This document shows, in pieces, positions 7,798-58,000 of a DNA stretch of 64,000 nucleotides. Position 1 is the first letter of the stretch, and each line of letters starts with the position of its first letter. The notes under the pieces are model-generated. The model was not told the DNA's origin, made no database searches, and saw nothing but the letters and a program-made list of their open reading frames with translations. The DNA is taken from positions 100,378,001-100,442,000 of the forward strand of contig OZ320317.1 of the NCBI GenBank assembly GCA_976226885.1, in the 5' to 3' direction. The translations under genes were made by a program, and so were the position numbers. The stretch comes from Iphione sp. A-MEVVRFRX5. Its lineage: Eukaryota.

Positions 7798-8077
7798 TGT
7801 TTATTTGCTTGGAAGAGTTCACCCCTTCAAATCTTTATCCCTGTGAGCCTTTGAGAAAATAAAAAGTTTCACAGCGCTGAGCAAGCATATACGTATGCCA
7901 AATGCAAAAGTGCAGATGATCGTTCAAAAACCTCACTTAGCCTACACACAACCAACTACAAATTCATGATGACCTACCAAATGTTGAAGGCTGGGATAAA
8001 GTTAGAGTTGAGGTGATGGAGGAAAAATTTTTGGCAACATTCGGTCAAAACGATGAGTTGAAAGCAGAACTCATGAA
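7797..8077 (+). pseudogene. LINE A NADAR/YbiA domain, N-terminal half (frameshifted)
   Basis: Manual translation: SNLYPCE (7827-7847), KKFHSAEQAYTYAKCK, EGWDKVRVEVMEEKFLATFGQNDELKAEL; aligns with LINE B NADAR. Mostly absent from the ORF track. Confidence 0.85.
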
Positions 8078-9940
8078 GGGCATGTCAGACCAGAAGCAAG
8101 TAAGTCAAGATCAGCATGGCTTCCGCCAGGGACGCAGTACGGAGACAGCAGTAACCTGTGTCATAAACAGGACTCTGGAGGTGCTCAACATGGGCCTATA
8201 CTGCTGCCTTCTAGCATTCGATCTGAAGAAGGCCTTCGATTTGGTTCCTTCTTCAGGAGTGCTACGTAGGCTGGCCACGGCGGGAGCTAGTTCAAGGATC
8301 TTAAAACTGATTGCTAGTTACTTTCAAAATTGGCATCAGTTTGTGAGATGTGAGGGGGAGGTCTCGAGCCTGAGGAAGGTTGCACACGGTGTACCACAAG
8401 GGTCGATCTTCGGCCCCAGTGCCTTTACCATGATCATAGATGAACTGGCCGGCAAATTGCCATCTTATGCTAAGGTCACACTCTATGCAGACGATCTTAC
8501 GATAGTGGTGTCTGCAATGGACCTTCTGAGGCTGCGAGGATGTGCACAGTACGTCATCAACACAGTCGTCTCATGGTGCCGTTCAAACGGGCTACTACTC
8601 AGTGAAGGGAAATGTAGCTACATGGTGATGGGAAAGGCGGCTGCAACACCCCTTGATCTACACATCAACGACACTGAGCTGCAGATGGTACGGAAAATCA
8701 AATTGCTAGGTTACATGCTGGATGACAGGCTCACTTTTCGCGAGATGCTAAGAGACACAAAGGCGAAGATGTGGGGTGCGGCCCTGAAGATAGGACGGGT
8801 TAAAACACTACTTCCGATGGAGACACGCATGCGACTTTTCAGAGCCCTAGTTATGCCTCATCTGAACTACGGTGCAGCGACCCTTTTCAGCCTAACGGAG
8901 GCAGGTAAAGCTAATCTGCAGATTCACCTAAACAGGTGTCTCAGAGTGGGGGTCATGAGAGAAAGAGCTCTGACTGCCAAAGCACTCTGCCAGAGGTTTG
9001 GGATACCACGCGTGTCGGATCTCATTGAACAGAGAGCCATCAACGCTACACATCGACTGGTGCATCTGGAATTACTTCCACTGGCAGAGCATTCGCGGAC
9101 GAGGGTGGGATCATCATTGCTGATAAGAATCCCGAAGCCCAAGGGACTAAGGTTCATGAAAAGCTTAAGATATGGGGCCTGCACGGCTTGGAATGGGCTA
9201 CCGCGCGACGTCAAGTTGAGGGTAAAACCGCCAGGACGTCCAGGAAGAACGTAGAAGCAGGATGGTCGAAACAGCACGGAGGCAATTGGTTCACTGACGC
9301 TAGTATAGGATGATGGGGGTAACAACTATGGCTGCCTCCCCCAAACAACAACATCTGAAGGGGTCTTTTTGGGGAGGGGGTCTACTTCTTTCGTGGGTAG
9401 CAACTCTAGGGAGTACTGGGTTAGATGGCGGGGGCAGACATCCACACTACGAGGGTTCCACATGGTTGATGGTCACTGGGTTCTACTGCGTGGGTTGGGG
9501 ATCTACATATGGGGTTGAGCGTGTTGGGTATTAATCGTGAACGGTATTGTACAAGGGGGGCGATGAGTAGCTCAGTGTTACTTATTTATACACTGAACGT
9601 CATTCTTTCACTTGAGTGATAGTTGTGTAAAGTTCTGTATCGTCAAGCCTCTATGCAGCAACACATTATCTCTAGCAGTCAACAAAATCCCAGCAACACT
9701 GACATACTTGGGGGGCGTCTCCTCCTAGTTAGATTTGTGCGGGTATTGTTATAACCTGCTGTGCTGTACATATGTGTCTGTACCATACTGTTGTCTTGAT
9801 TGAAAACTGTCTGTCCTGTATTGTCATATTCTGTATGTACCTTGTTGTTATGTTCCATGTCCAATATTTTTCAATTGACCAAGGAGAACTTTGTAAATGT
9901 ACGAAGATTTGGTTGATCAATAAATTCAAATTCAAATTCA
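8078..9940 (+). mobile_element. 5'-truncated LINE (RT + 3' UTR) inserted into the LINE A NADAR domain
   Basis: RT QHGFR, FDLKKAFD, VPQGSIFGP, YADD; C-terminal RYGACTAWNGLP; AATAAA 9919-9924 then (TTCAAA)n tail; degenerate target-site duplication AACTCATGAA (8068-8077) / AACTAATTGAA (9941-9951). Confidence 0.9.
8085..9254 (+). CDS. Non-LTR reverse transcriptase (5'-truncated ORF2, open frame); same lineage as LINE C RT
   Basis: Uninterrupted RT motifs including YADD; close match to 50854..52191 (QHGFR..STETA, GLYCC, KIGRVK.LLP). Confidence 0.9.
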   Translation, partial: SDQKQVSQDQHGFRQGRSTETAVTCVINRTLEVLNMGLYCCLLAFDLKKAFDLVPSSGVLRRLATAGASSRILKLIASYFQNWHQFVRCEGEVSSLRKVAHGVPQGSIFGPSAFTMIIDELAGKLPSYAKVTLYADDLTIVVSAMDLLRLRGCAQYVINTVVSWCRSNGLLLSEGKCSYMVMGKAAATPLDLHINDTELQMVRKIKLLGYMLDDRLTFREMLRDTKAKMWGAALKIGRVKTLLPMETRMRLFRALVMPHLNYGAATLFSLTEAGKANLQIHLNRCLRVGVMRERALTAKALCQRFGIPRVSDLIEQRAINATHRLVHLELLPLAEHSRTRVGSSLLIRIPKPKGLRFMKSLRYGACTAWNGLPRDVKLRVKPPGRPGRT

Positions 9941-10120
9941 AACTAATTGAAACAGGAGACTCGGGACTGGTGGAGGCGACCTATCATAAATTCTGGGGTG
10001 CAGGGAAGAGGAAAAACCTGGGGTTTTCAAAGAACGGCGAATATCAGGGTGGAAAGTTGTTTAGGTCAATTTCTTGAGTGTGGAAGAGACCAGCTGTCAT
10101 CTGAGATGGAAGTGAACTAA
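9941..10120 (+). pseudogene. LINE A NADAR domain, C-terminal half
   Basis: LIETGDSGLVEATYHKFWGAG...GEYQGG then shifted GQFLECGRDQLSS*, matching LINE B LLSTGDKLLIEATQNDFWGAG...GKILESVRQHLSS*. Confidence 0.85.
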
Positions 10121-17802: not shown

Positions 17803-20800
17803 ATGCCTGATCACAGGAAAGAGACCTGCTCAGCATGGCTGACATGTGCAGCGTGCTTTTTACTTTTTACCATTATTGGTGGTTTCATCTGTTCAATGGG
17901 AGTGTTGTATATCATGTTTGAGGAAGCTTTGAGTGCTGAAAAGAGTGCAGTAGCTCTCATACCTTCTCTCCATTACTGCATTTACTGCATCACTGGTATG
18001 CTTACCTTCTTAGAATTACATTAGCAACCTGTCTTATGGTCAACTCGACTGGCCAGCAATCGCACAGTTATGAGCACTTAGGCTTTGTCCAAATGACCTT
18101 TCCTATAGGTTCAATCATTCAGAAATATGACCATCCCTCAGCAGCAGACAAATCAGTTCAGTCAGATTAGTAGGTTGCATTAGCGAGTTGCTACTATGTT
18201 TCCCTTACCACCTCTGTTGAGGTTTTTCTCTGAGATTTTGAATTTTAAAACTGCACTGGAAATTATAGGAATATTGCTGAACTGCAAAGAGCATATCTTA
18301 GAAAGTGCTAATTAATGTACCCTTGGTTTTTAGCCAAACTGCTCTGAAATGAGACATCTCCCCATTAGAGGCTTCCTTTAATTTAAAGCAAATTTTTTTT
18401 CTCTAAAGTTTCCTTTGAGAAAGAATATCCTGATTGGGAAAATGTTCTTAATATTGCTTTCCTCTTTTATATCTAAAGCTCACAATGATATTTCACTCAG
18501 ATGACTTTAGTCTCTTAAAACAATTTCATCATATAGGTCCTCTATCTGGTCTTCTTGTGGAACACTTTGGGGAGCGTAAGATTGCCATATTTGGTTCAAT
18601 CCTGTCTTCCTGTGGCACAGCACTGGGCTCATTAGCAACAGAGGTAGGCTTTTCATTACTTCTTAAGACTTTGTAAGACTTAAGACTTTGCCCAAAGTTA
18701 TGTAAATAATGTTAGAAGACAAACACTATCCTAACCATTGACTCCAAATACTCTCCCACCCGTTAATGACACTATGAGTTATTTAAGAAGCAAGCAATTA
18801 GTTGGCCACTGAAATATTGTTCAAAATTAGTCAGAAGGTGTCTTTTGCTAGATTCACTTGACCAGCCATCTATCAAGTACCTGTAAGGCTGTGACTATCT
18901 GAGTAGTTTTCACTTTCTCTATGCAGAATTGAGAATTACCTTTAAACATAGATTTTGACAGTAAATAGAATTATATCATTGTTATCAATGAAAGAAGCTA
19001 AGAGTCAAGGAACAAAGAACAAGACTTACCTTTTAGTAAGCTTTATTAATTTGATAAACAAAACATATACCATGCGCTGCCTGTAAGTTAGGGTAAAGCT
19101 TTAGATTTATATTTTTATCACCAGGCTTGCAGTAAGGCAATTTCTCAGGACCATGAAGTCATCAATAAGGGGAAGGATGAGAACATTAAGTGCAGTTAGA
19201 TGAGGTGATCTTGGATTAACCAGAGAAATCGGGTAGTTAAAAAATGCAACATTTGCCCTCTACTATCCAGTTTATAACCAGATTAAGACAACACATATAT
19301 TAAATGTATCTAAATTCTTCTATGTCTTCCAGGAATATATGATGTACCTAAGAAAGGAAAATATAAGATTGATAAAAGTCTCTCATGAGCCATATATGAA
19401 CAGCTGATGGTATGTTTCTTGTCTAGGTCACACATCTCTACATTACCTACAGTGTCACCAATGCTGCAGGTCTTACCCTGATAATGACTGCTTCGCTTGC
19501 TATTCTGGACAAGCACTTTCAAACAAAGAAGAACTTAGTCAATGGCATAGTTGAATCTGGCATAGCGATTGGTGCATTAGCTTTCCCACCTGCCATCAGA
19601 CTACTCGAGGGTGTATATGGCTGGAGGGGAGCTCTTCTGCTTCTGGCTGGCATCAACCTACAGATGGTTATTTGTGCATCATTGTTTAGACCAATTCATA
19701 GGACTAGATCTAGGCTGAGTGATTTAAAGACTCAGGAAAAAACATTAGATGCAGTGAAGATATCATTAGATCAGCCTAAAGAGACTGTGATGCTTGAACG
19801 GCTGAAACTATTTACTCAGATCCGATTCTCTTTCACCTGTTTACATTATTTGATCTTCACCTTTCCATACTGCCTACTTTATACTCACCTAGGGGCCTAT
19901 GTTTTGGCCCTGGGTTTCTCTTCAAAACACTCAGTCCTAATCTATACGACTATTGGGTGCATTTCAATGATAGCCAGATTTCTTATAGGTTTCCTTGCCT
20001 ATATGACTGGGGTTAATATATTCATTTTTCCACTGGTCAGCTCCTTTTTCCTTGGCATTTTTACACTTGTACTTCCCTTTTGTAAGGCACTCTGGATGAT
20101 TTACATATATAGTGCTCTTTTTGGATTGTTCAGTGCATCATTCAATTCCTTAATAATGCCAATAGCTGCTGATTTAGTGTCCTCTGAACTGCTTCCAACT
20201 GCAATAGGTATCATATTTTTGTTTCGTACACCAGGATCAATTGCTGGACCCCCTGTAGCAGGTAAGGCTATTCAATTCTATGTCTTATATTCTAGTCTAT
20301 TTCCAAATATAGTTATTATCATATAATCATAAACTAATCATCCCTAATTATGATGTGTGTGGAAATCACAGTGGCAATGCCATAACCTATTATCATTTAT
20401 GATGGTAACAGGTATTATATTTTCATTGTATTTTATGAATATATTTCATTGAGAATGTAAATAATAGAAAAGACAACATTCATTACAAACATGGCTGAAC
20501 TAGACCCTGGACAATTTTTGTCTTTCCTGCAGTCTGTTATCATTAAGGCAGTTTCTATATGGAGGGAAATTATTTTTTTCTTGAAAATATGAGTCTCTCC
20601 CAAATTTTGTTTTTTCCTGAAACTTGTGAATTTCTATTGCATTCATCTATGATGTTACTAAAGACACATTGTCAGACTGCAAAAGGAACCTGAATTAATA
20701 ACATGTCGTATCCGATCTCCTCTCATCAGTAGTTTCTCATACTCATTTATTATTCTCTCTTTCCAGCTTCACTTTATGATCTAACCGGCCAATATTCTAC

Positions 20801-22165: not shown

Positions 22166-22973
22166 TCGGGGTAAAGGTAGGGGAAGTTCTAAAAGGAAAA
22201 AAGAAAACAGCCCTGGTACCGAATTAAAAATGGACAAACAGGTCCTTGATGGTCTTTCACCCGAAATGAGGGTTCTTATGAATGAAATATTAGAAAACAG
22301 GCGAATTGCAAGTGAGGCATCGTCTGAAATAAGTTCTAGGCTAGAAAGTCTTGAATCTAAAGTTAGTAACTGTAATGCTACGGTGGGCATTAATACTAGG
22401 AGATTAGACACTGTCGAAGAACAATTAAAACAATTACAGAGTGAGAATGACTCACTTAAGGCTGAGGTTGCAGAATTAAAGAAAGTGAACCCAAAGGGTG
22501 CAGTCAGTAGAGACAAAGAATCATGGGATCGACGTTGGAGGCAGAATTGTGTGTTTATCGATGGCCTTAATGTGGAGGAGGATGAGGATTTGTTAAGCGA
22601 AGTTGTCTCATTCTTAGCAACCTTGGACTCAACTATTGAAGAGAGTGACATTGACGATGTTTTCCGTACAAATCGCAAAAATTCCTCTGGGAATCCAATA
22701 ATCTCAGTTAGATTCACTCGGAGCATTGCAAAGCAAAAGGTAATGAAAGCTAAAGGGCAGTTGAAAGGGAAGGACGTATGGATAAACCCTGATCTAACCC
22801 AAATCCAACGTAAGAACTTGGCTGTCGTTAAAAGTGCTTTAAGACATATCAGGTCTGTTGACGAGAATGTTGAAGTGAAACTGAAGGGGGACAAATTATC
22901 TGTAGATGGTACCATCTATACTGCTGAGAATCTATATAAGTTACCAGATCACCTGTGGCCCCCCCTGAGTTGA
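22166..22973 (+). CDS. LINE B ORF1: basic N-terminus, coiled coil, RRM/CTD-like region (first internal ATG 22230)
   Basis: KRKKENSPG; heptads; NCVFIDGLNVEEDEDL, DIDDVFR, PIISVRF, VWINPDLT, LSVDGTIY typical of L1-type/Crack-type ORF1 proteins. Confidence 0.85.
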
Positions 22974-23449: not shown

Positions 23450-23562
23450 TTGCTGTGATTTTACGAATGACCGGTTCGGTCGGCTGAGGTAACCGTACTG
23501 GTCACACCGCTTTTGACACTGCATTGGCTGCCACACACCGTGTCATAGGCCCAGACGGTATT

Positions 23563-24246
23563 ATGGAGTACAATATGTCTATTCATGTTTTTGCCTCGTC
23601 TCATGGTAGGAGGCTTCAGGAATGTTTTCAAAGGCTGGGTTGGACGGTTTTCGTCCATGTTTATCCTGGAGCACGCCTGCGTGATATCTGTGAGCATATT
23701 TTGCTCGAGGACTGGTGGCCAATCCCAGACCTGGTGATAATTTATGCAGGAGGTAACGATATGACGAAGCTGATACGTATGGCTACACCTGAGGGAGGAA
23801 GCAAAAGGTATTTAGTGCCTCGATTTAATAACGCTGTTGTAGCTGCAGACACTGTTGAGTACTATTTATGGACAACAAGAACTGCAGTGCAAACAAAATA
23901 CCCATTGGCAAACATTATGTATTGTACCCTGTGTGCTGTGGACTATTCAACATATAACAATAGGTTGAATGGTTATGACTCTGGTTCTGCCCGTCGTATT
24001 TATGTTCAGGAGTTACTCAACGCCAGTATGATTCTACTGAACCAACGAATAGTCTCTGTGAACAAAACTTATGGGATACCCACGCCATGGACTGGTTTAG
24101 TAGTGCATAGTCGTAACAATGGGCGTTGGTGACATAGGCTATGCAGATACTACGATGGGTGCCATCTGCGTATTTATTGGAAAATGAGGCAACCGGAGAA
24201 GATAATTTCAGCTATTACTCATCTGTGGTATGGTGTGAGGTGGTGA
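23563..24246 (+). CDS. Stand-alone SGNH/GDSL-type hydrolase ORF (one in-frame TGA at 24130-24132)
   Basis: Block I VFASSHG, block II YPGARL, block III YAGGND, block V YDGCHL found by reading through the single stop. Confidence 0.85.
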
Positions 24247-25157
24247 ATGCATTGTTGAACGGTAATCATAGTCATGAGATTGTGATGACTGATTTGCAAA
24301 GACATTAATGTAGGTTTATTTGATTAACTGACATGGTACATGGTATTCGATTATACGGTACTTTAATGGACGTGGTTCCTGAATGTACGTTTGTATAACT
24401 GATTTATTATGTATATTTAGGGCAATATTTGATTGAATTATGTTTTAATGGACATGGTTCCTGAATGTACTTGTGTACAATCAATTACTGCCAACATTTA
24501 CACTAACGTTATGTATTTACTTATTGTTCCTCAGTTAAGTAATGAGCTATGAAGTGTAGATTTATAATGAAAACTGATATGGACGTGGTTCCTGACAGTA
24601 ATTTGCATTACAAATCATTACAACTAAGATTGAGTATTATGTACTAATTACACTATTTCTCATTAACAAATTGTATTTGTATCTTGTTTATTTGGATTGT
24701 TATCACGAACACTCGCAGCTGATGTTGTTGTGGCTTATAAATTCACCTGACTTATCTGTTAGTAGATTGCTCTATACGTGGGTGGTTGTAAGCGTATTTG
24801 TTTCTGAGAAAATCGTTTGTTCTTAATAATAATATTTGTAACTGTTTTCGAGATTAAACCATAAGTAATGCTAAACTTATATGATTTGAAGCTCTGAGTT
24901 TGACTGTTGCTATTGATTGGAGCGGCGTATGGCATCTCCAGCCAATCTTAATGTTTTATTAACTATCTAATTTGACAAAATTATTAATTTCGTCGAATTT
25001 GTGTACCTTAATTACTTAAACTTTACTACTTTTGTTTGTGTACGTTGAATTTAGTTAACTTGATGCTTTGCTACTTTGCATTGTTCACTATACTAATTAT
25101 TGTTATTATGAGCTCTATTACCAGGCGATATGAAGATATATTGATGGTTGATAATGT

Positions 25158-36546: not shown

Positions 36547-38927
36547 ATGCCTGAACACGGGGAAACAACCTGCTCAGCATGGCTGATATGTACAGCATGC
36601 TTTTTCATTCAAGCCATCATTGGTGGTCTCCTCTATTCCATGGGAGTTTTCTACATCATGTTTGAGGAAGCTTTAGGTGCTGACAAGAGTGCAGTAGCTC
36701 TCATATCTTCTCTCCATTACTGCATTTACTGCATCACAGGTATGCTTACATCCCTACGAAAAATTATGTGTTTTTTTTACCACCTTTGTTGATGATTTTC
36801 CTACACTACCTCAGCTTGGGAGGAACATATTTTTGAACAATTTTCGTTGCTTGCAAAAATTTTTTTTTTCATATAGGTCCTTTATCTGGTCTTCTTGTGG
36901 AGTACTTTGGGGAGCGTAGGATTGCCATATTTGGTTCAATCTTGTCCTCCTGTGGCATTGCACTGGGCTCTTTAGCAATGGAGGTAGGCTTTTAATACCT
37001 TGCTTATAACTTCTATATAATTATTCATTCATAATTGTTTTAAAATTCATAGAACCTACTCCAAAAGCTATTTATATCATACTGATACTGACCCTTTACT
37101 CCAAACACTCTCCAAACACCTTTGACGTTATGAATTATCAAACAGGTAAGCAAATAGCAGGCTAAGAAATCGTACATGATAGCAACAAAGAGATTGTTTC
37201 TAGAATAATTCCTATGAAGCCTCAGAAGCATCTTTTAGGGGGCCTTCATGTGTATCCATATTTTGCTACAGCTATGGGCCTGCAGACATGGAAAATTATC
37301 TGCATATGTGGCTGTATCTTTATTTATTTACTGCTCTAGATCTGTAGTAATAGCTGAGGAAACCATCTGGAACAGGTTCTCCATAGCTATGGATCAAATT
37401 TCCGTAGAAAACAATGGTGAAAAGACATCTGGTTAACATATGGAATTAATTAAAATAAACACAACTGAAGTTTTCCTACATCTCCTGACTGTTAGATGTG
37501 TTTTCCTATAGAAACATATGAAGAACCCCCTTCATCTCATTTTTCAGCTGATGCAGTTTTCTACTAGTTATTACCAAGAATATATTATGCATCTTGTACA
37601 GCAAAATGTAGTGTGATTTACAGACTGTCATTATTTACATGTAATTACTAAACCTGTTGGTTTCAACCTTCTTCTTGTCTAGGTCACACATCTCTACATT
37701 GCATACAGTGTCACCAATGCTGTAGGACTATCTCTGATAATCACCCCTTCACTTGCTATTCTTAACAAACACTTCCCAACAATGAAGAACTTAGCAAATG
37801 GCATCGTCTCCTGTGGAGTAGGCATTGGTGCATTAGCTTTCCCACCTGCCATCAGACTACTGGAGGGCATGTATGGCTGGAGGGGGGTTCTTCTGCTACT
37901 AGCAGGCATCAACCTACATATGGTTATCTGTGCTGCATTATTTAGACCAGTTTGTATTACCAAATATTGGCTGAGTAATTTACAGATCCAAGAAAATAAG
38001 GTGGTTGTGGCAAAAGCATCACTAGATCAGCCTAAAGAAACTTTGATACTTATTACACGGCTAAAATTATTTACTCAGATCAGATTCTCTTTTACTTGTA
38101 TACATTTTTTGGTTTTTACCTTCCCATTCTCCCTAATCTATACTCACCTAGGGGCCTATGTGTTATCCTTGGGTTTCTCTTCCAGACACTCAGTCCTAAT
38201 CTATATGATCATTGGTTTTATCACCCTGATATGTCGATTTCTTGTAGGTTTCATGGCCTACATTACTAAAGCTAATATATTCATTTTCCCACTGGTCAGT
38301 GCCTTTTTCCTTGGTATCATTACACTAGTACTACCCTTCTTTAATCCACTGTGGATGATATACATATATAGTGCTCTTTTTGGACTGTTCGGTGCACCAT
38401 TCAATTCCTTAACAATGCCAATATCTGCTGACTTAGTACCCTCAGAAATGCTTCCAACTTCGATAGGTGTGTTATTTTTGTTCTCTTCACCAGGAGCAAT
38501 TGCTGGGCCTCCTTTAGGTGGTAAGGCTCTTTAATTTTATGTTACATTTTCTGTCTGGTTTAAGATAAAGTTATCATGATATAATAATAAAGTAAAAATG
38601 CATACAATGGCTAATGCACTTATATGACAAAACACTAAAGTATGATAATTAACGAGAGTAATAAGTATCATAGATTCATCCTAAGATCATTATTTCATAA
38701 ATTTCAAATAAAAGAATGTCATATCTTGGTCTGATGCATTTTATCAGTAGTTTTTCATATCCAGTTATTGTTCTCCCCTTCCAGCTGTACTCTATAATCT
38801 GACAGGCCATTATTCTACTGCACTCTTTACGGCTGGTGGTTTGGCAATACTAGCAGCTATATCTTTGCTCCCAGTTCTTTTTGGAAAGAAAAACCTGAAT
38901 GCAAACTCCATGCAAAGTCACCTCTGA
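36547..38927 (+). CDS. SLC16/MCT-family MFS protein, copy 2; join(36547..36739,36877..36983,37683..38520,38785..38927), 426 aa
   Basis: Same splice sites and phases as copy 1; open frame; intron 1 much shorter (137 bp). Confidence 0.9.
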
Positions 38928-45738: not shown

Positions 45739-47598
45739 ATGGGCCGCACATCTAACTCAAAAAGGGCATCCAATGAGGATACAAGGATGACATCTCATAG
45801 GTCCACGATGGAGATCTTGCTTGGTGGAACTAAGGATAAAAATCCCACTCGCATTAACCTGACTGGATCGTCAAGTTTGAATCCAACGGTCAAGCTGACC
45901 AAGCTGCCCATTACAGTCCTTGACAAGTATTCGAGCAGCCAACCACAATCAACGGTCAAACAAATCAAGTGGTCCAGTACGGTCATTGACAAGTATCCAA
46001 GCAGTCAACCACAATCAACTTTATATGGCAACGAGCCTTCAGGTGGTAAGTCTACGTCAAAATCAAACTGCAAAAATGGGCCATTGGATGTCTCAAGTGA
46101 TGAACCCTCGATCTTGTTAGACAAGACTGGATGTTCTGAGGAAAACATCTACAACTCGCCAATTGGTAGGAAATTTCTTGCTAACTCTACTTTTAACGTA
46201 GGTATCGATTCGGTGCACTCAAAAAATATTGACCCACCTGATGATAGCAGCATCCTGTTAAATATGAGTGACCCTATCTTATCCGCTTCGGTGGATGACG
46301 AATCAGCTGATTCAGTTGGGTCGCCGATACCAGGAGACTCTGTCAACACTGACAACAATAGTGGTTATTACCATTACATGGAATCTCTGAAGTCTGAAAT
46401 TATGCATGATATTCGTGATTTGATCTCGGAAGCTACACACAAGGTGGAGCAGTTGATCAAGGATGTAAGGGGAGAGATCTCAGCTCTCAAAAATGAGATA
46501 GGCATACTAAAAGTCCCACAGGATAGCACAACAAATACTGCGAATGCAAACATTGACAATGCGATCAATGACATTGACATCAAACTACGCTACTTGACTG
46601 ACTCAATTGAGAAAACTAAGCTCTCCCTAACAAGGCTAGAAATTAATGACAGAAACAGAAGGGTGGTGATTGAAGGTATTCCCAGCAAAGAGCGGTCAGG
46701 ACTTGGAAACTTTCTATACAATGTTTTCAACAAGATTGCAGGGCTTAAAAAACATGAGATTATCGACTGTCAAGTCTACAGTGAGAGCCAAGTTGGGCTC
46801 AGAGTGGGAGTTCTCCTCGACTCGATTGAGTCACGTAATAGTCTGTTACGCAGTAGATTCAATCTTCAAAAAGAGGAGGGGCTGAGAAAAATATTCATAA
46901 AAGAAGATCTCCCAAAATCAGCTATTGAAATGCACGCCAAGCAACAGAGGAGAGCGGCGAAAGCACATGGGCACAGAAATAAGGCCACTGTCAGAGGCAT
47001 CGACCTAATTATCGATGGTGACAAATTCACGCCCCTTGACACGCAATACCTACCTGGCTACTTGACTGACAACTCCTTGAATGCTATTATTACGGATAAC
47101 GAATATGCCTTTGACTGTGATAACACGCATTTCTCCCCTGAAATATGTGGGCCGATAATCCATGATGGTAAACAATACACGTCACCGGAAATGGCTCTGC
47201 ATGAATTGAGGTCACGTCTGGAATGAGACTTGAAACTAGAGCAAGCCCTGCATAATTGCGGAACCGTCATTGAGGCCAGACATGATAGTCGCCGTGCTAA
47301 AGGAACAGAAAGATGGGAATTGAATTCGAAGGCAATTCTATCACAAGTATATGATTATTACTTTTCGAAAAACAAATTAGCCCGTGAGGCCCTCCTTGCG
47401 ACTGGATCAAAGAATATAGTGTATGCGGACAGTAATGTTTAGCTTGGCACGAGGGCCCATATGGGGTCGGGCTCAGAGGGCGACTCAACTGATGCAAAAG
47501 GGAAAAACCTCGTAGGAGAGGCACTGATGGGGCTATGCAAGAGATACACTAAACAACAATCAACTCAGTATCATTACCGCTTGTGCGCAACTTGCTGA
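45739..47598 (+). pseudogene. LINE C ORF1 with in-frame C-terminal NADAR domain (two internal stops: 47224-47226, 47440-47442)
   Basis: Ser/Asp-rich N-terminus with a 66-nt internal repeat, coiled coil, RRVVIEGIP, IFIKEDLP, LIIDGDKF; then HFSPEICGPIIHDGKQYTSPEMAL...W...FSKNKLAREALLATGSKNIVYADS..GKNLVGEALMGL, all in one frame. Confidence 0.85.
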
Positions 47599-47684: not shown

Positions 47685-48391
47685 ATGCGTTACCCGCCGT
47701 CGGTACGTGCGAGCCACTCAACCAGAATACTCGTCATCGCGGACACTCGTAGTTCGCCTGCTTTCAAGGAACTGGAGTCTCAGCTGCATCTACTCCCTCC
47801 AACCAACATCCACCTCATCACCCTGAAGCGGGCATCCTACAAAAACATAGCCCGCTGGTTGTCGTATACGGAGGTAGTGCGATATCACCTGGTATTGATT
47901 GCTGCTGGGATGTATGATTGGGTGAGAAAGGAATCTGGGCTTTGGGTGGTACATTCTGGCTCTCCTGCAGAATATGCCCGAAAGCTGGACTTCTACCTGG
48001 AGAAAATCCGCGGCCACTGTAGTGACATCGATGGTTCAGGCCCCCACTTGGTGCTATCATCTGCTGCTGGTGTTGACTTGGCGGGATTAGCTCCAGATAT
48101 CAGTGACGACATTGAGCAATTCAAGATTGACTGTGCAATCTCTATTCAAAACATGCGCTGTGATTCTTCCTCCAGTGAGATTGGTGCTGTCTCTCCTCAC
48201 CGGTTAGCATTCCAAGTGGTGGCTCGATTACCCACAACTTCGACCATCTACGCTCTGATGGTTTCAGACCGAAGGATGGCACACTAAATGAGTGGACATA
48301 TTCGGTCCGTCTATTCCTTCATGACTACATTAGGTTATATGGTCACTTCCACTTGGAGAACAATGGCCCCCTAGTGCATGTCCACTACTAA
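47685..48391 (+). pseudogene. LINE C stand-alone SGNH-like ORF (divergent; one frameshift)
   Basis: ILVIADTR (block I-like), LVLIAAGMYD (block III-like), shifted-frame HNFDHLRSDGFRP (block V-like); occupies the same position as in A and B. Confidence 0.65.
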
Positions 48392-49462
48392 AATATTCCT
48401 GTGTTACTTGTAACTCGAGGGCACCAATTTGTCCTATGAACTGCTCAGCTCAAGACTTATTTGCTGACCTAGACCAGGAGAGCAATGTCAGCAATGTCAG
48501 CATAGTCAATTTATTCCTGAGCCAGAGGATAACCCTCAGTTGACTTGAGAAGGAGTAGTTTATTGATTCTCTTTACACTTGCATTTGAGTTGTTTCTTTT
48601 CAACAAGTTTTCACACGCAATACATGTGATAGATCACTGAAAGCACTACTCAATTAGTATAAGGTGGATTCAACAGGTACAGAAATTGGTTTATTAATTA
48701 GTCTATTCATGTGTTATGTTATTTTGTCATGTAGCCCTCGAACCCATTGTCAGTACATGCCACCTCAGAAGGAACTAAGCTGCGTGATCCTTTCAGTGTT
48801 GCTAGGAATGTTAGCTTATCTGTGATCTCTACGCTTGTATCCGAGTTACCTTTAACCATACTATCTGTGCATAAGAAATATTCCTCAAAGTGTAATGAGT
48901 GTGTGCTATCTCTTTTTCTACCCTCATATCGCTAATCGTCTAATCAAGTATTTCCCAAACACACTAGTAGAAATATTTATCCCAGAGTGACTTACTCTCG
49001 TGCTTGATCGGTGTTCTGGTGAAGGTATTTTCTATTCATATCTCTATAATATATTCGACTTGTTTAATCAAAAAATTTTGCTACTACTCAATAGCATGTT
49101 AATCTGTATGCGTATGTAATTGTTTCTGTTACGAGCATAAAGGTAAACACAGTCAGGTAACAGAATTGTTGTCATATTTAATATTCTTTATTATCTGCCA
49201 ACAAGTAATTAATATACATTATCACTTGTCAACCAATATGATTACCCCCTTGTAATTATCTATTCTGATCTCGGACTTCCTAAGTTACTTTATAACTACC
49301 GTTGCACTTTCTTCCAATCGTGACTTATCGGATTGTTTGAATTATCATACTTAACTGCTGCCTATGAATCAATAAATGGTAGAAGCTCAACCTTCCTAAC
49401 CTGTGAGTTGATAGGCCTTATCTTGCCCACCCAACATATAAAAGGCCTGATATTACCCCAAG

Positions 49463-52191
49463 ATGGCACCAGGATTGAACATAATGTGCTTCAATGTAAG
49501 GAGTATTGGGAAAAAGTTACCAGATATTGCCTCACTGTTTAAATCTGAGAATGTGGACATTGGGTTAATAACAGAGACCTGGTTAAATGAATTTTATAGT
49601 GACTCGGCCCTACATATACCTGGGTACCTTTTCATACGTGCAGATAGGAAGAATAAGTTGAAAACTAAAGGGGGTGGACTAATGCTTTACTACTGAGATT
49701 CATTTGTTGTAACTAGGGTATTATCTGATGACAAAAGACAATCACTTGAGTACCTAGGTGCTAAAATCAAGGCTGGTAAAAGGAAGCCAATCGAGATTTT
49801 GTGTGTGTACAGACCTCCCCATGTTGCAATCTCGGAAACTGTGGTTACTCTTGACGAAGTGTGCAACTCCCTATTCTCGAAAAAAGGTACTGACCACGTA
49901 ATAATGGGAGATTTCAATTACGATTACACTTCTGAAGTAAGGTGGGTTACAGGATCATCAGATTGCTGAGTGGGCTAGGTCTTCGACAAGTCATACAGGG
50001 AGGAACTATGGTCAACAGTGACAGCTGTCTTGACCATAAATGGGTCAACTGTCAGGTTAGGAATGCAGGGTCCCCTCTTGACTATTTCATTAGCGATCAC
50101 CTACCGGTAGCGGTCACAGTAAAAAAGGGGGCACCCAATGTAACCAAGGAAGTGGTGACGATCAGGTGTTGGTCTAAGGTAGACATTCAACAACTTACTA
50201 GGGAGATAGTTGAGGGAGGGTATACTTACAAAGAGGGTGACCATGAGGAACAGTGGGATAGGTTCGAAGAGTACACCAGAAAGAGCTTGGAGAATATCTG
50301 TCCCATGAAAAAGATAGTAGTAAAAAAGGACCCTGATGACTTTGCACCTAGTGCGAGTTTAAAAAATCTCATTGAAGACAGAGCATACTTCTTCCGTAAA
50401 TGGAAAAGATCTTAGGACATTGATAGTAGATGCATCTTTAAATATCTAAACAAAGAAGTCGAGAGGGGCCTAAAATGGGAAAGGAGAGCTTATTGGAGCA
50501 ACAAACTATCGCAGGCAAAGGGTGATAACAGGGCAACCTGGGGGATCCTCAACAGGGTTGTTGGAAGAGACAGGGACATCCCTAGGTTACCATCCGTACC
50601 GACAGGCAGTAAGGACAATCTAGCAACATCCTTCAACAATCACTTCATAGGGGTAGTTGATTCCTTAACTGCAAACCTAAACCCAACAATTGACTCAACA
50701 GATTCTGGTCCCACTAACACCTTTGAACTTCCCTATCCCAGTCCAACTGAGGTAGCCACTGCTATTGGTAAGCAAAAACTCACCAAGCCATCTGGGGTCA
50801 GTGGGATCCCGTCAAAAATCCTCAGGCCGCTTCTACTGAACTGCCATGAGTTTTTGACTTGGATATTCTTTCAATCAATCGTGTTAGGGAGATTCCCAGA
50901 CTCTTGGAAACTTGGGAAGGTAACGCCTGTCTTCAAGAAGGGGGACCATGGGAACTTAGCCAACTACAGACCTGTAACCATCTTGCCCCTCCCCGGGAAA
51001 ATCTTTGAGCATTGGTTTTGTGGCAAACTATCTAACTGGATGGAGGAAAATAAGCTTCTGCGAAGTGAGCAACATGGATTTAGAAAAAACCACTCTACAG
51101 AAACAGCCATAACTAGTCTCTGGTGTGATATCATGGAACAATGTAACAATGGGTTATACTGTTGTATCCTCTTATTCGATTTAAAGAAAGCATTTGACGT
51201 TGTGTCACATGTGAAGCTATTGGATGATATGAGACAAATAGGCATAGGTGATCATACCAGGGAGTTCTTTGCCAGCTACCTCTCCAACAGACGACAGTAT
51301 GTTGTATTCAATCACCAAACCTCTTGCAGCAGTGTGGTAAAACACGGAGTACCTCAGGGGTCTGTGTTGGGGCCTTTGGCCTTCAGCATAGTAATAAATG
51401 ACATCCTTTCTGTTATTCCGAAGTGTTGTTCTCCGATCTTAAATGCTGATGACTTAACTGTCGCCATCTATGCCCCAAACCTTCACAAACTTTGTCAACT
51501 ATCAATGCTAATTCTTAAGAGTGCAGCTGACTGGTGTAAAAAGGCGGGGCTGATACTCAGTGAAAACAAGTGTGTGTATTTGACAGTTGGACGAGCCAGT
51601 AGCTATGACCTTGACCTCTCATTGAACGGGTTGCCATTATGTCATGTCCCTTCTTGTAAGATTCTGGGGTACATGATCGACTCTTCATTAAAGCCATTGG
51701 CCAGCTGGCGTCATGTAAGAAGGTTGATGTGGTCGGCTTCTCTCAAAATTGGACGCGTAAAATACCTGCTTCCTCTGAAATCAAGAATGGGGCTCTTCTC
51801 ATCCTTAGTAGTAAGTCACTTGTACTACCATGCTGTTATGCTATATAGTCTATCATGTTCTCAGCGAGTGAAATTGCAGACCTTCGTAAACAAGTGTGCT
51901 AGAGTATGTTATCAAAAACATGATTTCCTCCCTGCACGAGTACTAATGGAGAAATTTGCAGTACCGAGAGTTCACACTTTGATTGACAGCAAAGGTCTGC
52001 GGGCAGTAAATAACCTAATGTCTCTTAATCTTCTGCCTATGTCCCATGCCACCAACACCAGAGTTGGTCAATCGCAGAGAGGTGCCCTATCTAAGCCTAA
52101 TTCTGTTATCTATGAGAGATCCTTGCGATATAATGGAGTCAAGGCATGGAATGATCAGCGTCGCCCAATTGTAAAATTGACTAGTGTGTAA
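49463..52191 (+). pseudogene. LINE C ORF2 (APE + RT), few disablements
   Basis: CFNVRS, ITETWL, YRPP, GDFN, SDH; NYRPVT, QHGFR, FDLKKAFD, PQGSVLGP, NADD (mutated YADD); stops at 49694 and 50413 plus frameshifts. Confidence 0.92.
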
Positions 52192-52757
52192 TGACCTGTC
52201 TCTTACCTGTACTGCTGTACTGTCCAATGTTCTTACCGATGTAGTACGTAGGTATGCTACTGAAATGCATGTGACGTCTTGGGCTTGAAACACATTCATT
52301 CTCATGTGTAGTCCCCATAAGGGCTATTTTACTTGTCGTCTGACGACTCTAGATTCTATGTGCTTGCTAAAGTTTACTACCTGTGCCTATGCGTCTTCTA
52401 TCTTAAACCAGCACCCCATTGAACGGTTAATAGGATACTTGTTATCTAACTAAATGTACTCTGTGATATTTAATGTGTGTAACAATCGTTTTCTGCTGAC
52501 ACTCATGTTGATCCAACTATATACACTTTTTGTTTGTTTATATGCTTTGATTATCTTGTACAATCTTTCAATTGACATGTATTAGCCTCTTGATGTAAAT
52601 GTGTTGATTCTTTCTTTGTTGTTATTCACTGGCAGGCGGCCAATTTCCAAGTGAAGCTCTAGACCTGTATTTAGAGATGGAAATAAAATATCTTGTATCT
52701 TGTATCTTGTATTTTGTAAAACCTGTGCTTAGTGCCAGAAAATGATCTGGGATTTAA

Positions 52758-54035
52758 CATTTGAGATTTGAGATTTGATTTGTTTATAAACCGGTCACAA
52801 GTTAAACTATATAAAATTCTCCTTTGGTTAATGTAGATTTCAAAAAATATATGTACAGCATTGACAGTAAAATACAGTGTAACATAAAACAGAAGTGACA
52901 TAGTGTGAGGTGCATTGGATGATATTTTATACCTGCTATACAGAGTTAATCTGATGGGAAGGATACGCAACACAATACATGACACAATATACAAGAATTT
53001 TGAGTTTGTGGAATATACAGGTACATTACAATTGATACCTGTTTACAGTGATGTGCATAGATTGTGTACCATATGCAGTCAATATTGCAGCATAGCATTT
53101 AGTGAGACACATTTATGCTGATTATGTGCATAATCAGTATTGTACCAAGTGGCTTAGATTACCTAAAGCCATTATCAGCTAATGTTCCTTGAACACCATC
53201 CCACTGGAAAAAATAGGTAACCTCTTATGCAGTGCAACAGACAATAAATTGCTATTTGCATGTGTAGTGTACATAAATACACAATCGATGGCACAATATG
53301 GAGCATAAATGAAAATGTATATCTATTATTTATTGGTGTGTTTTCTTAGTAGCATAAACCATATTTGTCATGATACAAAATATGATAGGTAACAACTCGA
53401 GCTGCACTATGACCTATAGTAAATGTTCATGGAGTAGCACTAATTACACCGCCTTCCTCACATGTATGCCACAGTGCAGGGTCTGCGGTCCATTGCATAC
53501 TCAGGGGTCAATGAACCCAAGCCCATTTGTAGCACAAAGCCAACACCACCAGTGAGGTCCTATTCTGCCTTTTATTTCTTCTCAGCATCAGATGTTACAT
53601 TGAGTCAGCATCTTCAACAGCAACTGAGGGTGAGTCCGGCTACAGCGTCGGACCGCTAAGCTTATATACCACAGTGGACCAGATACAGCCATTCTTTACT
53701 GACACATGCACAATAGGTCGTAAAAGTCTATGACATCACTAGAGTCCCGCATCCTATCCACTGATAGGAAGAATTGCAAATTACAAAAAGGTCACAAACA
53801 AATTTTTCATCTGGTACATGTTACTTTGCAGCAGGCATTACTTACAATCCTTTCATCTATATACTGTACAGTATGTTGCCATATTATCATAACCATCTGA
53901 GATTACTTTCATTTCACAATCACACATAACGTAATGACATAGTACCCAATTCCCCCTCTTAAGGAGTAGTGGTTTTGCCAACATCTTCATCATCATGTTC
54001 ATAACTGTGTTACACATGATACAGTTAACTAGTTT
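52758..54035 (-). mobile_element. Non-coding LINE 3' fragment (long 3' UTR) lying tail-to-tail with LINE C
   Basis: Minus-strand end ACCAAAGGAGAATTTT...ATAAA then (AAATCTC)n; terminal motif resembles GACCAAGGAGAACTTT of the 8078-9940 element; homologous to 6897-7600. Confidence 0.65.
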
Positions 54036-55095: not shown

Positions 55096-58000
55096 ATGCC
55101 TGAAGTTAGGAAGGAGACCTGCTCAGCATGGCTGATATGTGCTGCAAGCTTTGTCAATCATGCCATCATTGATGGTCTCCTCTATTCAATGGGAGTTTTG
55201 TACATCATGTTTGAGGAAGCTTTGAGTGCTGATAAGAGTGCAGTAGCTTTCATACCTTCTCTGCATTACTGTATTTACTGCATCACTGGTATGCTTACCT
55301 TGCCAGAAAAAGTTACAAAAAAGTCACAGTAGCAACCCGCCTCATAGCCAACAGGACTGTCTGAGCAACTTACAGTTATGGGCACTTATTCCTGGTCTGA
55401 ATAAGTTCTCCTATAAATTTCAATCAGAAATCCAATCAACACTCAGTAACAGGCAAATCAGCTTGGTCTGATGAGTGATTGCTTTGGTTGGTTGCTACTG
55501 TATATCTATTTCGCTTACTAAACTGTTGAATCATAACGTTTCACTGAAAATCATGGGAATACTGCTCAGCTGGAAGGCATATATCTAGAAGTTTCTAATC
55601 AGGATACCCTTAGATTTGACCAAATCTGCTCTGAAATGAGACATTTTGCAATAAAAGGTCTTGATTACGTAAAGCACATGTTCCTTTTTGTCAGACATTT
55701 CCTTTCCTAAAGAATGTCCTCATTGGAGATATGTCCAATACATGGCTTTCCTCTTTTATGTCAAAAGCTAAGAGAAATATTTTACTTATTTTACATTCAT
55801 CACTTTTAATAATTTCTCATCATATAGGTCCTCTGTCTGGTCCTTTAGTGGAGTACTTTGGAGAGCGTAAGATTGCCATATTTGGCTCAATCCTGTCTTC
55901 CTGCGGCATAGCGCTGGGCTCTTTAGCAACAGAGGTAAGCTTTTTTATACCTCCTTAAGATTTTCTATAACATTGACCTAAAGTCTGTACTTAATAAAGC
56001 TTCAAATCTATATAAATAAAGTAAGAAGACACTTTGAGCACTATCCTAGCCATTGACCCGAAATACTCTCCTACCCATTATCCTTTTGAGTTAGTCAACA
56101 GGCAAGCAAATAGTTGGCCAACTACAAAATTGCCAATGTTGGCATGTACATTACTTTTATTGGAATACATCAACTAGCAATCTAGGGAATTGCCGGTAAG
56201 GCTCTGTACACTTTATTAGTTACACTTTCTTTATGCATAATTGAACTTTGATTTTGATGGTGAATAGAATAGAATAGAAAGAGCTAGGACTTAATAAACA
56301 AACAACAACCCTAACCTTTTAGTAAGCTTCAAAAATTTGAAAACATTACATAGACCATACACTACATGTGAATTAGGGTAAAGCTTTAGATTCATATAGT
56401 AATCACCAGGCAATACAGACATTAGGAAGTTAAAAACTGCAATATTTGCTCTCTGCTATCCGGATTAAAACTTGATAAAAAGGTGTCTACTTTCTACCTT
56501 GTCTCGGCCACCATAATAATAGAAGAATTTTCTACATTAAGTAAAGTTGAATGAGAAATATTTATCTTATCCCAACTTACATAATGACCATTAATTACTT
56601 CCAAGAATATATTATGTATCTTGTACAAGAGATGTAGGATGGTTTATATTTTGTCATTATCCATATATAAAAAGCTGTTGGTCTTTACCATTTTCGTTTC
56701 TAGGTGCCACATCTCTACATTACCTACAGTGTCGTGAATGGTGCAGGTCTCACTCTGACAATGACTGCTTCCCTTACTATTCTGGACAAGCACTTTCAAA
56801 CCAAGAAGACCTTAGCCAGTGGGATAGTCTCCTGTGGAGTAGGCATTGGTGCATTAGGTTTTCCACCTGCCATCAGACTACTAGAGGGTGTGTATGGCTG
56901 GAGGGGGGTTCTTCAGGTAATGGCTGCCATCAACCTACACATGGTTGTCTGTGCTGCATTGTTTAGACCAAGTCATAGGACCAGATCTTGGCTGAGTAAT
57001 TTGGAGAACCAGGATAAAAAAATAGATGCACTGAAAATATCACTTGATCAGTCTAAAAAGAATTTCATGCTCATTGAAAGGCTAAAACTATTTACTCAGA
57101 TCAGATTCTCTTTCACCTGTTTACTTTATTTGATCTTTACCTTCCCATTCTCCCTACTCTATACTCACCTAGGGGCTTATGTTTTGGCCATGGGTTTCTC
57201 TCCTAGACACTCAGTCCTAATCTATATGACTATTGGATGTATCTCGATGATAGCAAGATTTCTGATTGGTTTCATTGCCCATTTGACTGGGGTTAATATA
57301 TTCATTTTCCCACTTGTAAGCTCCCTTTTCCTTGGCATTATTACACTAATACTGCCCTTCTGTAAGGCACTCTGGATGATTTACTTGTACAGTGCTCTTT
57401 TTGGATTGTTCAGTTCATCATTCAATTCTTTGATAATGCTAATTGCTGCAGATTTAGTGTCCTCAAATCTGCTTCCAACTGCGATGGGTGTCCTCTTTTT
57501 GTTTCGTACACCAGGATCAATTGCAGGACCCCCTGTAGCAGGTAAGTCTCTTCAATTCTATGCCATACATTTTCAGTCAGAATCAAACTTATGTTATTAT
57601 GATATAAACATAAAGTAATGATCCACATTCTAGGTAATTAAATCAAAGGGACAATGCATTCAAATATGATAATTTATTATAGTAACAGGCATCATAATTT
57701 TGTTCTACTTCATGAAAATATTTCATTAATTCCTTTAAATAATAGAAAAGACAGGTCTCCATACCATACAGTACAAACATGACTGAACAAGGGACTGCAC
57801 CATTCTTATTTGTCCTGCAGTCGTCTATCATTAGGCAGTTTCTGTATGGAGGAAATGTATTTGTTATTCCAAATATTAGTCCTTCTTACATTTTCAATTT
57901 TCCTTAAATTTGTTTTTAAGTACGTTTCCACCATATATATCTATAGTGTAAGTAATGATATGTTTTCAGACTGCAAATGAAGTCTTAATAAAAACCATTT

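What the first reader, a model, noticed from the sequence alone, without database searches (positions are those of the whole stretch)
45739..47598. In LINE C the NADAR domain is in frame with ORF1, so it is a fused C-terminal domain
Seen: reading through only two single stop codons (47224, 47440) gives a 620-codon frame from the ORF1 ATG through a divergent NADAR (DGKQYTSPE...ALLATGSKNIVYADS...GKNLVGEALMGL). The ORF track breaks it into pieces, hiding the domain. LINE C's RT is of a different lineage from A/B (it groups by motif with the 8078-9940 element). Inference: the ORF1-NADAR fusion is old and has been kept in at least two RT lineages, which points to selection, not a one-off capture.
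Basis: partly seen in the sequence, partly recalled or inferred. Interest (0 to 1): 0.85.

Follow-up and report, generated by a model that had tools for sequence, protein, structure and literature searches.

The report
Dead LINE with degenerate ORF1-NADAR fusion
A dead copy of a jumping gene (a LINE) in this animal-type genome has its RNA-coating protein joined in one reading frame to a NADAR enzyme domain, as its intact relatives elsewhere do, but this lineage's domain has lost the residues those relatives always keep.

Summary
Window 45739-47598 is one 620-codon frame with internal stops only at 47224 (TGA) and 47440 (TAG). It runs from an L1-type ORF1p (disordered N-terminus, coiled coil, RRM, CTD) into a complete, colinear NADAR domain. 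Read through with X, the domain scores 46-50 bits over nearly the whole profile; shuffles reach 6 bits at most.

The nearest detectable relatives of this ORF1 are intact single-ORF ORF1-NADAR proteins, several followed by APE-RT ORF2s. LINE C's RT forms a fully supported clade with the 8013-9251 element. That clade is apart from LINE A/B and from other ORF1-NADAR elements, so the fusion spans at least four RT groups.

The "kept by selection" reading is only partly supported for LINE C. Fourteen intact relatives and LINE A keep the S-N, E-Q and last-strand Glu residues. LINE C has S-P, E-M and Tyr, each a two-step codon change. The copy is only about 2% decayed, so these changes belong to the family. 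Its NADAR is also far more diverged than its ORF1 core.

No other copy of the family could be reached, so whether the stops are copy-specific, and dN/dS, remain untested.

ORF1-NADAR LINEs were mentioned in passing in a 2025 paper (PMC12477816). This scan has noted them on other DNA of this genome about 100 times.

The parts
45739..47598 (+). ORF1-NADAR reading frame of LINE C: 620 codons, broken by two stops
45739..46383 (+). N-terminal low-complexity region of ORF1p (aa 1-215), with a short internal duplication. No family hit.
46384..46650 (+). Coiled coil (about aa 216-304)
   Evidence: Weak coiled-coil Pfam hits over aa 216-308. Helix 2-33 of the AF2 model, which starts at aa 272.
46651..47085 (+). 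RRM plus CTD of an L1-type ORF1p (about aa 305-449)
   Evidence: Core HMM built from public proteins: E 6e-19 and 52-66 bits. Profile A2 hits human L1 ORF1p 2YKP at E 1e-12. The AF2 model has pLDDT 91 and matches 2YKP/2YKQ at TM 0.6-0.74.
47095..47541 (+). NADAR domain (aa 453-601), complete in length and divergent, with non-canonical residues at invariant columns: S-P at 47134-47139, E-M at 47188-47193, Tyr at 47422-47424
47224..47226 (+). First in-frame stop (TGA), inside the NADAR domain at a variable column
47440..47442 (+). Second in-frame stop (TAG), at the column of the conserved aromatic residue (Trp in most relatives) of the W-G-x-G motif
47685..48287 (+). Middle ORF of 200 aa, at the position where LINE A has its GDSL-like ORF. 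No detectable relatives; status open.
48288..49462 (+). AT-rich stretch without an ORF, upstream of ORF2
49463..52191 (+). ORF2 (APE plus RT), broken by a stop at 49694, a frameshift near 49930-49950 and a stop at 50413. The RT domain lies at about 50938-51678.
52192..52778 (+). Probable 3' UTR ending in short tandem repeats: (TATCTTG)x4 at 52689-52718 and (GATTTGA)x4 at 52751-52778. The element's end is inferred and no target-site duplication was found.

Best explanation
LINE C (about 45.7-52.8 kb, + strand) is a dead, apparently full-length non-LTR retrotransposon copy.

Its first gene encodes an L1-type ORF1p (disordered N-terminus, coiled coil, RRM, CTD) that continues in the same frame into a C-terminal NADAR domain. 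This matches the intact ORF1-NADAR proteins of related LINEs in other genomes.

The two stops inside the domain are most likely decay of this copy after it stopped being selected (inferred). The element carries four in-frame stops and one frameshift in about 1,730 codons, which corresponds to roughly 2% neutral change.

The NADAR of this lineage is not a canonical enzyme. The Asn of the S-N motif, the Gln of E-Q and the last-strand Glu that defines YbiA-type NADARs are replaced by Pro, Met and Tyr. Each replacement needs two base changes, so they predate this copy.

The fold-length domain was kept without indels, so the lineage most likely carried NADAR as an inactive or re-purposed module on ORF1p, for example one that binds nucleic acid or ADP-ribose.

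For the wider family, the conserved active site suggests that ORF1p brings an N-glycoside/ADP-ribosyl-base hydrolase to the LINE's own RNA, cDNA or target DNA. That step is inference from bacterial, phage and oomycete NADARs and is untested.
For: - One frame with two stops.
- Full-length colinear NADAR match with X at the breaks: 49.9 and 45.7 bits, shuffles at most 6 bits. Pfam NADAR hits the middle piece at E 4.8e-5.
- An exhaustive phmmer search of 1.84 billion representatives with the 495-aa piece gave six hits. Four are intact ORF1-NADAR fusions aligned into the start of NADAR.
- L003, L004, L009, L011 and L012 show such genes upstream of ORF2s. APE and/or RT were shown for L003, L004 and L011 by the Pfam families listed with the contigs (and by hmmscan for L003 and L004), and for L009 and L012 by RT or L1 ORF2p matches in the PDB.
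- The ORF1 core has the L1 ORF1p fold.
- Invariant S-N, E-Q and Glu in 13-14 public proteins and LINE A, against S-P, E-M and Tyr in LINE C, with codons CCT, ATG and TAT.
- Mapping of the SxEQ Glu and the Lys seven residues after it onto E43 and K50 of 8BAU. The last-strand Glu is the YbiA-family hallmark.
- Decay estimate 2.0% (95% CI 0.5-5.1%). Three two-step codon changes arising by decay has p<1e-6.
- NADAR-to-core score ratio is 0.87 in C, against 1.2-2.0 in relatives that are equally distant in the core.
Against: - Only one copy of the family is available, so the state of the two stops and of the odd residues in active copies is inferred, not seen.
- Both ORF1 stops lie in the NADAR part: 2 of the element's 4 stops fall in 11.5% of the stop-prone target, p = 0.07. 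That leaves room for a domain already being lost before this copy inserted.
- Pfam does not reach its gathering score on any single piece.
- The decay estimate assumes the element was intact at insertion and rests on four events.
- The ancestral residues are assumed to equal those of today's relatives.
- No activity or expression data exist; no sequencing run was listed.
Confidence: 0.72

Rival explanations
1. Vestige. In the LINE C family ORF1 already ended at the 47224 stop, or NADAR was otherwise already unselected in the master element. The downstream NADAR sequence is then a decaying remnant, not a working part of ORF1p.
For: - Both ORF1 stops lie in NADAR.
- All three invariant catalytic-type columns, plus the conserved Arg of the final L-M-x-x-R motif, are changed.
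- NADAR scores less than half of what relatives with a comparable ORF1 core score.
- The ORF1-NADAR terminal branch of C is the longest in the tree: 3.13 against a median of 0.95.
Against: - The enrichment of stops is not significant (p = 0.07).
- The domain keeps full length with one 2-residue gap and no frameshift, and still scores 46-50 bits. Neutral drift long enough to make three two-step codon changes should have left many more stops and indels.
- The second stop sits at a conserved Trp column, as expected of late decay of a sense codon.
Confidence: 0.2
2. Independent capture. LINE C acquired its NADAR separately from LINE A/B and the public elements, so the shared layout is convergent.
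For: - LINE C's NADAR is very divergent, about 22% identity at best over the ORF1-NADAR alignment.
- Its placement in the ORF1-NADAR tree is unresolved.
- Gypsy elements of Ectocarpus acquired NADAR independently.
Against: - The ORF1 core itself is homologous to the cores of the fusion proteins: E 6e-19, and four of the six exhaustive hits are fusions.
- The domain follows the CTD after the same short linker and in the same order as in all relatives.
- One fusion inherited with ORF1 is more parsimonious.
Confidence: 0.05
3. Programmed read-through or recoding. The two stops are decoded, so this copy still makes the fusion protein.
For: None beyond the shared frame.
Against: - The stops lie inside a folded domain, one at a conserved Trp column.
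- ORF2 of the same copy has two more stops and a frameshift.
- Intact relatives have no stops at these places.
Confidence: 0.02

Closest known systems
ORF1-NADAR LINEs: ORF1 proteins of LINE families of the Pacific oyster that Repbase files as Tx1, noted in PMC12477816 (Genome Biol 2025)
   Same: A YbiA-type NADAR domain carried by the ORF1 protein of a non-LTR retrotransposon. The same single-ORF layout is seen here in 14 intact public proteins.
   Different: LINE C's RT is a separate lineage (C+D clade); whether it is Tx1 was not determined. Its NADAR lacks the invariant N, Q and E. It also has an extra 200-aa ORF and a 1.2-kb spacer before ORF2.
LINE A and LINE B of this window (22.0-28.0 kb and 6.2-14.3 kb)
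   Same: ORF1 core, then NADAR, then a middle ORF of about 200 aa, then an AT-rich spacer, then APE-RT ORF2.
   Different: - RT is 29% identical to LINE C and in another clade.
- A's NADAR is canonical (Pfam E 7e-28; N, Q and E kept) but sits in another frame, with a 19-nt overlap with ORF1.
- The middle ORFs show no similarity to LINE C's.
Human LINE-1 ORF1p (PDB 2YKP, 2YKO, 2YKQ)
   Same: Coiled coil, RRM and CTD architecture: profile E 1e-12, model TM 0.6-0.74.
   Different: L1 ORF1p ends after the CTD and has no enzyme domain. Sequence identity is about 15%.
Characterised NADARs: Phytophthora nicotianae NADAR (8BAU), E. coli YbiA (2B3W), DarT1-linked NADAR (PMC11543638, PMC11125620)
   Same: Same domain family. 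The public LINE NADAR P0003 hits 8BAU at E 7e-12 and YbiA at E 4e-9. The ribose-binding Glu and the basic residue seven positions later are kept in LINE C.
   Different: Those are free-standing or toxin-linked hydrolases with a Glu, Asp or His in the last strand. LINE C has Tyr there and Pro in place of the S-N Asn, and its activity is untested.

Membership tests
NADAR domain (Pfam PF08719), YbiA family | Profile match over the whole domain | tested here: met
   With X at the two breaks: 49.9 bits over HMM 3-155 of 162 and 45.7 bits over HMM 4-153 of 157; shuffles reach 6 bits at most. These are my own HMMs, not Pfam's.
NADAR domain (Pfam PF08719), YbiA family | Pfam gathering score (35.1 bits) | tested here: not met
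   Only the 71-aa middle piece hits, at 24.1 bits and E 4.8e-5. Pieces had to be searched apart, so the test is handicapped.
NADAR domain (Pfam PF08719), YbiA family | Glu of the S-x-E-Q motif (E43 of P. nicotianae NADAR, distal-ribose contact) | tested here: met
   The Glu is kept (codon at 47188), but the following Gln is Met.
NADAR domain (Pfam PF08719), YbiA family | Basic residue seven positions after that Glu (K50 of P. nicotianae; K95R is active in E. coli C7 NADAR) | tested here: met
   Arg at 47209.
NADAR domain (Pfam PF08719), YbiA family | Glu in the last strand, the residue that defines the YbiA family | tested here: not met
   Tyr (TAT at 47422). Glu is present in all 13 public proteins that reach this column and in LINE A and B.
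NADAR domain (Pfam PF08719), YbiA family | Asn of the N-terminal S-N-[FHLM] motif | tested here: not met
   Pro (CCT at 47137). Asn is invariant in 14 public proteins and in LINE A.
NADAR domain (Pfam PF08719), YbiA family | Hydrolase activity on N-glycosidic or ADP-ribosyl-base bonds | not testable with these tools
   Needs an enzyme assay.
L1-type ORF1p (coiled coil, RRM, CTD) | Sequence-profile and fold match to LINE-1 ORF1p | tested here: met
   Profile A2 against 2YKP: E 1e-12. AF2 model pLDDT 91.4; Foldseek top nine hits are all human L1 ORF1p, TM 0.6-0.74.
Non-LTR retrotransposon (LINE) | ORF2 with an APE endonuclease and a reverse transcriptase downstream on the same strand | tested here: met
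   Exo_endo_phos E 3.5e-4 and RVT_1 E 1e-29. tblastn alignment to LINE A ORF2 residues 10-834.
Non-LTR retrotransposon (LINE) | Defined ends: target-site duplication and a 3' tail | tested here: inconclusive
   Short tandem repeats at 52689-52778 could be the tail. No target-site duplication was found.
ORF1-NADAR LINE group (PMC12477816) | ORF1 core and NADAR in one open reading frame | tested here: met
   Same frame and colinear with 14 intact fusion proteins, but interrupted by two stops in this copy.
Tx1 clade of LINEs | RT groups with reference Tx1 elements | not tested
   No reference RT set was on hand. Comparisons with solved L1 ORF2p and R2 proteins gave no consistent clade signal: C hits R2 at 36.6 bits and L1 at 27 bits, A gives no L1 hit, L009 hits L1 at 77 bits.

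The most novel reading that the evidence does not exclude
The LINE C lineage keeps a catalytically dead NADAR on its ORF1p as a binding or scaffolding module (a pseudo-enzyme). If so, what LINEs gain from the domain is not, or not only, hydrolysis of ADP-ribosylated bases.
Probability: 0.3. Interest if true: 0.5.

Novelty: new member of a known kind. Interest (0 to 1): 0.38.

Why it matters
An enzyme domain of the kind that strips ADP-ribose from DNA and RNA bases, carried on the RNA-coating protein of LINEs, suggests that these elements meet or use base ADP-ribosylation during retrotransposition. Nobody has tested this.

This copy adds three things:
- The fusion is one ORF in a further, well-separated RT lineage.
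- The fusion was inherited together with an L1-type ORF1 core.
- Some lineages keep the fold after losing the canonical active site, which gives a natural inactive comparison for functional work.

By itself it is a dead copy of a barely described but already reported kind of element.

Tried and rejected
Searches for other copies of LINE C, all blank:
- tblastn within the window finds only the copy itself.
- Word-indexed protein search of the ORF1 core: no hit.
- Exhaustive phmmer search: best hit 29% identity.
- RT search: best hits 33-43% identity over partial lengths.
- Their contigs L005-L007 show no ORF1 or NADAR upstream.
- Metagenome scan: no hit.
- Exact-product look-up: not on record.
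- Two sequencing-run searches listed none, so read laying could not be used.

The middle ORF (47685-48287) stayed unidentified:
- No Pfam, PDB or Atlas match.
- BLASTP against LINE A's middle ORF: E 54.
- hhalign against the A+B middle ORFs: probability 0.1%.
- No tblastn hit in any fetched locus.
- The single-sequence AF2 model is unusable, pLDDT 35.

Other points:
- Naming the RT clade from matches to solved L1 ORF2p and R2 structures was rejected, because members of one starred clade behaved differently.
- Chance similarity to NADAR was rejected by the shuffle control.
- Enrichment of stops in NADAR was tested and is not significant.

Full report
**Observation.** Translation of 45739-47598 on the + strand gives 620 codons starting at an ATG. 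The only internal stops are at 47224 (TGA) and 47440 (TAG). The ORF list splits this into pieces of 495, 70 and 45 aa.

Pfam finds NADAR only in the middle piece: E 4.8e-5, 24.1 bits, profile positions 63-123. The C-terminal end of the first piece and the whole third piece are too short to score alone. I built an HMM from five clear NADAR domains (four public proteins and LINE A) and scored the tail of the frame with X at the two breaks. The match is 49.9 bits and covers HMM positions 3-155 of 162 with a single 2-residue gap; 2000 shuffles reach 6.0 bits at most. An HMM from 13 public sequences alone gives 45.7 bits. A complete NADAR domain therefore lies in the ORF1 frame across all three pieces.

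**What the ORF1 part is.**
- A profile of the region between the coiled coil and NADAR (LINE C, LINE A and 11 public proteins) hits human LINE-1 ORF1p at E 1e-12.
- An AlphaFold2 model of LINE C residues 272-449 has pLDDT 91.4. Its nine best PDB matches are all chains of the human L1 ORF1p trimer, TM 0.6-0.74.
- The protein therefore reads as: low-complexity N-terminus (aa 1-215), coiled coil, RRM, CTD, short linker, NADAR (aa 453-601).

**Relatives.**
- A word-indexed search found nothing.
- An exhaustive phmmer search of 1.84 billion representatives with the 495-aa piece found six proteins at E<=1e-3. Four of them (P0002, P0003, P0005, P0006) are intact single ORFs with the same core followed by a Pfam-significant NADAR, E 3e-18 to 4e-35. 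The alignment with LINE C runs into the start of their NADAR.
- A profile search added ten more such proteins.
- Their contigs show whole elements:
  - L003 and L004 have ORF1-NADAR followed by APE-RT ORF2s of 972 and 956 aa.
  - L008/L009, L011 and L012 have ORF1-NADAR, a 1.2-2.1 kb spacer and a long ORF2.
  - L001 has an APE start 1.75 kb downstream.
- The in-frame fusion proposed for LINE C is thus the normal intact state in its relatives.

**RT lineage.**
- LINE C's RT is 39% identical to the 5'-truncated element at 8013-9251, which is nested in LINE B's NADAR. It is 29% identical to LINE A and 27-28% identical to L003 and L004.
- In a maximum-likelihood tree, C+D is a 100/100 clade on a long stem. 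A+B+E is supported at 100/99, L003+L004 with their kin at 97/95, and L008/L009+L011+L012 with their kin at 100/99.
- ORF1-NADAR elements therefore occur in at least four separate RT groups.
- In the ORF1-NADAR tree, A+B is again 100/99. The proteins whose ORF2s fall in the L009/L011/L012 RT clade sit together in a 91/90 clade. C has the longest terminal branch (3.13 against a median of 0.95) and is not placed.
- The two trees agree where they are resolved, which fits inheritance of the fusion together with the RT, but the test has little power.
- I could not name the LINE clade. Matches to solved L1 ORF2p and R2 proteins were inconsistent within one supported clade.

**The active site.**
- Published work makes three residues of NADARs important:
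  - the Glu equivalent to E43 of the Phytophthora enzyme;
  - a Lys or Arg seven residues later (K50; K95R is active in the E. coli C7 enzyme);
- The alignment of P0003 to 8BAU and 2B3W fixes these columns.
- In 14 intact public ORF1-NADAR proteins and in LINE A, the S-N motif, the E-Q pair and the last-strand Glu are invariant.
- LINE C keeps the first Glu and has Arg at the basic position. It has S-P, E-M and Tyr at the other three, Cys at the conserved Arg of the final L-M-x-x-R motif, and its second stop sits at the conserved Trp column.
- The three replacements (codons CCT, ATG, TAT) each need two base changes from any codon for the conserved residue.

**Copy decay or family trait?**
- The element has four in-frame stops and one frameshift in about 1,730 codons.
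- A model of the stop-prone target size of these codons gives 2.0% neutral change (95% CI 0.5-5.1%). Even at the upper bound, three named codons each taking two hits has p<1e-6.
- The odd residues are therefore inferred to be a feature of the family, not of this copy.
- Against HMMs from public sequences, LINE C's ORF1 core scores 52.3 bits and its NADAR 45.7 bits. LINE A scores 62.6 and 127.4. Public members with similarly distant cores (70-90 bits, leave-one-out) score 108-141 bits for NADAR.
- NADAR is thus specifically over-diverged in this lineage, yet it has no indel beyond two residues and no frameshift.
- I read this as a retained fold with a lost or changed active site. The rival reading, a domain already on its way out, cannot be excluded. 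Both ORF1 stops lie in NADAR, though that enrichment is not significant (p = 0.07).

**What could not be done.**
- No other copy of the family was reachable.
- No sequencing run was listed.
The broken frame was read only with X at the breaks.

**Rest of the element.**
- A 200-aa ORF at 47685-48287 starts 87 nt after the NADAR frame ends. LINE A has a 202-aa ORF 75 nt after its NADAR, weakly GDSL-like at E 0.028. The two show no similarity, and the LINE C ORF matches nothing.
- A 1.2-kb AT-rich stretch without ORFs precedes ORF2. The same is seen in LINE A and in several public elements.
- The 3' region ends in short tandem repeats. No target-site duplication was found.

**Comparison with what is known.** PMC12477816 (2025) reports, in passing, YbiA-type NADAR domains in ORF1 proteins of oyster LINE families that Repbase files as Tx1, and suggests a role in RNA processing. 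Further literature searches found nothing else on the subject. Earlier notes of this scan describe the same fusion about 100 times on other DNA of this genome, and for LINE A and B in this window. LINE C is therefore a new, divergent and inactive-looking member of a known but barely described kind.

Noticed in passing
window 47685-48287 (+): A 200-aa ORF with an ATG start lies 87 nt after the NADAR frame, in the same position and of the same size as LINE A's GDSL-like ORF (23524-24132). It has no detectable similarity to that ORF or to anything else. By eye, the strings I-L-V-I-A-D-T and L-I-A-A-G-M-Y-D recall SGNH blocks I and III.
   Followed up: partly
window 48288-49462 and 24133-25157; L001 2523-4273; L008 5001-6522; L009 2549-4070; L011 1707-3813; L012 1429-2588: Many ORF1-NADAR LINEs have a 1.0-2.1 kb AT-rich (GC 0.25-0.37) stretch without ORFs in front of ORF2. 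L003 and L004 have only 0.4-0.5 kb. This could be an internal promoter or an entry site for ORF2 translation; it was not examined.
   Followed up: no
window 22940-22973: In LINE A the ORF1 frame and the NADAR frame overlap by 19 nt in different frames. All 14 intact public relatives have one ORF, so LINE A probably carries a single frameshift at the junction. Programmed frameshifting was not examined.
   Followed up: partly
window 7798-7980 and 9928-10071, with 8013-9251 between them: LINE B's NADAR is split by a nested, 5'-truncated element whose RT is the closest relative of LINE C's RT: 39% identity and a 100/100 clade.
   Followed up: partly
L009 4071-6215 and L008 6523-8625 (NCBI assemblies GCA_013332915.1 and GCA_029979845.1): The ORF2 downstream of the ORF1-NADAR protein P0136 aligns colinearly with human L1 ORF2p from the endonuclease into the RT, E 8e-21. 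This is much better than for LINE A or C, and may correspond to the Tx1 families mentioned in PMC12477816.
   Followed up: partly
window 19484-20326, 37782-38534, 56704-57618 (+): Three ORFs with MFS_1 transporter domains (E 3e-19 to 3e-24) lie about 18-19 kb apart on the same strand. They look like a tandem array of host genes with LINEs inserted between them.
   Followed up: no
window about 45900-46020: The low-complexity N-terminus of LINE C's ORF1p contains a short internal duplication: two similar stretches of about 17 residues rich in Ser, Gln and Pro.
   Followed up: no
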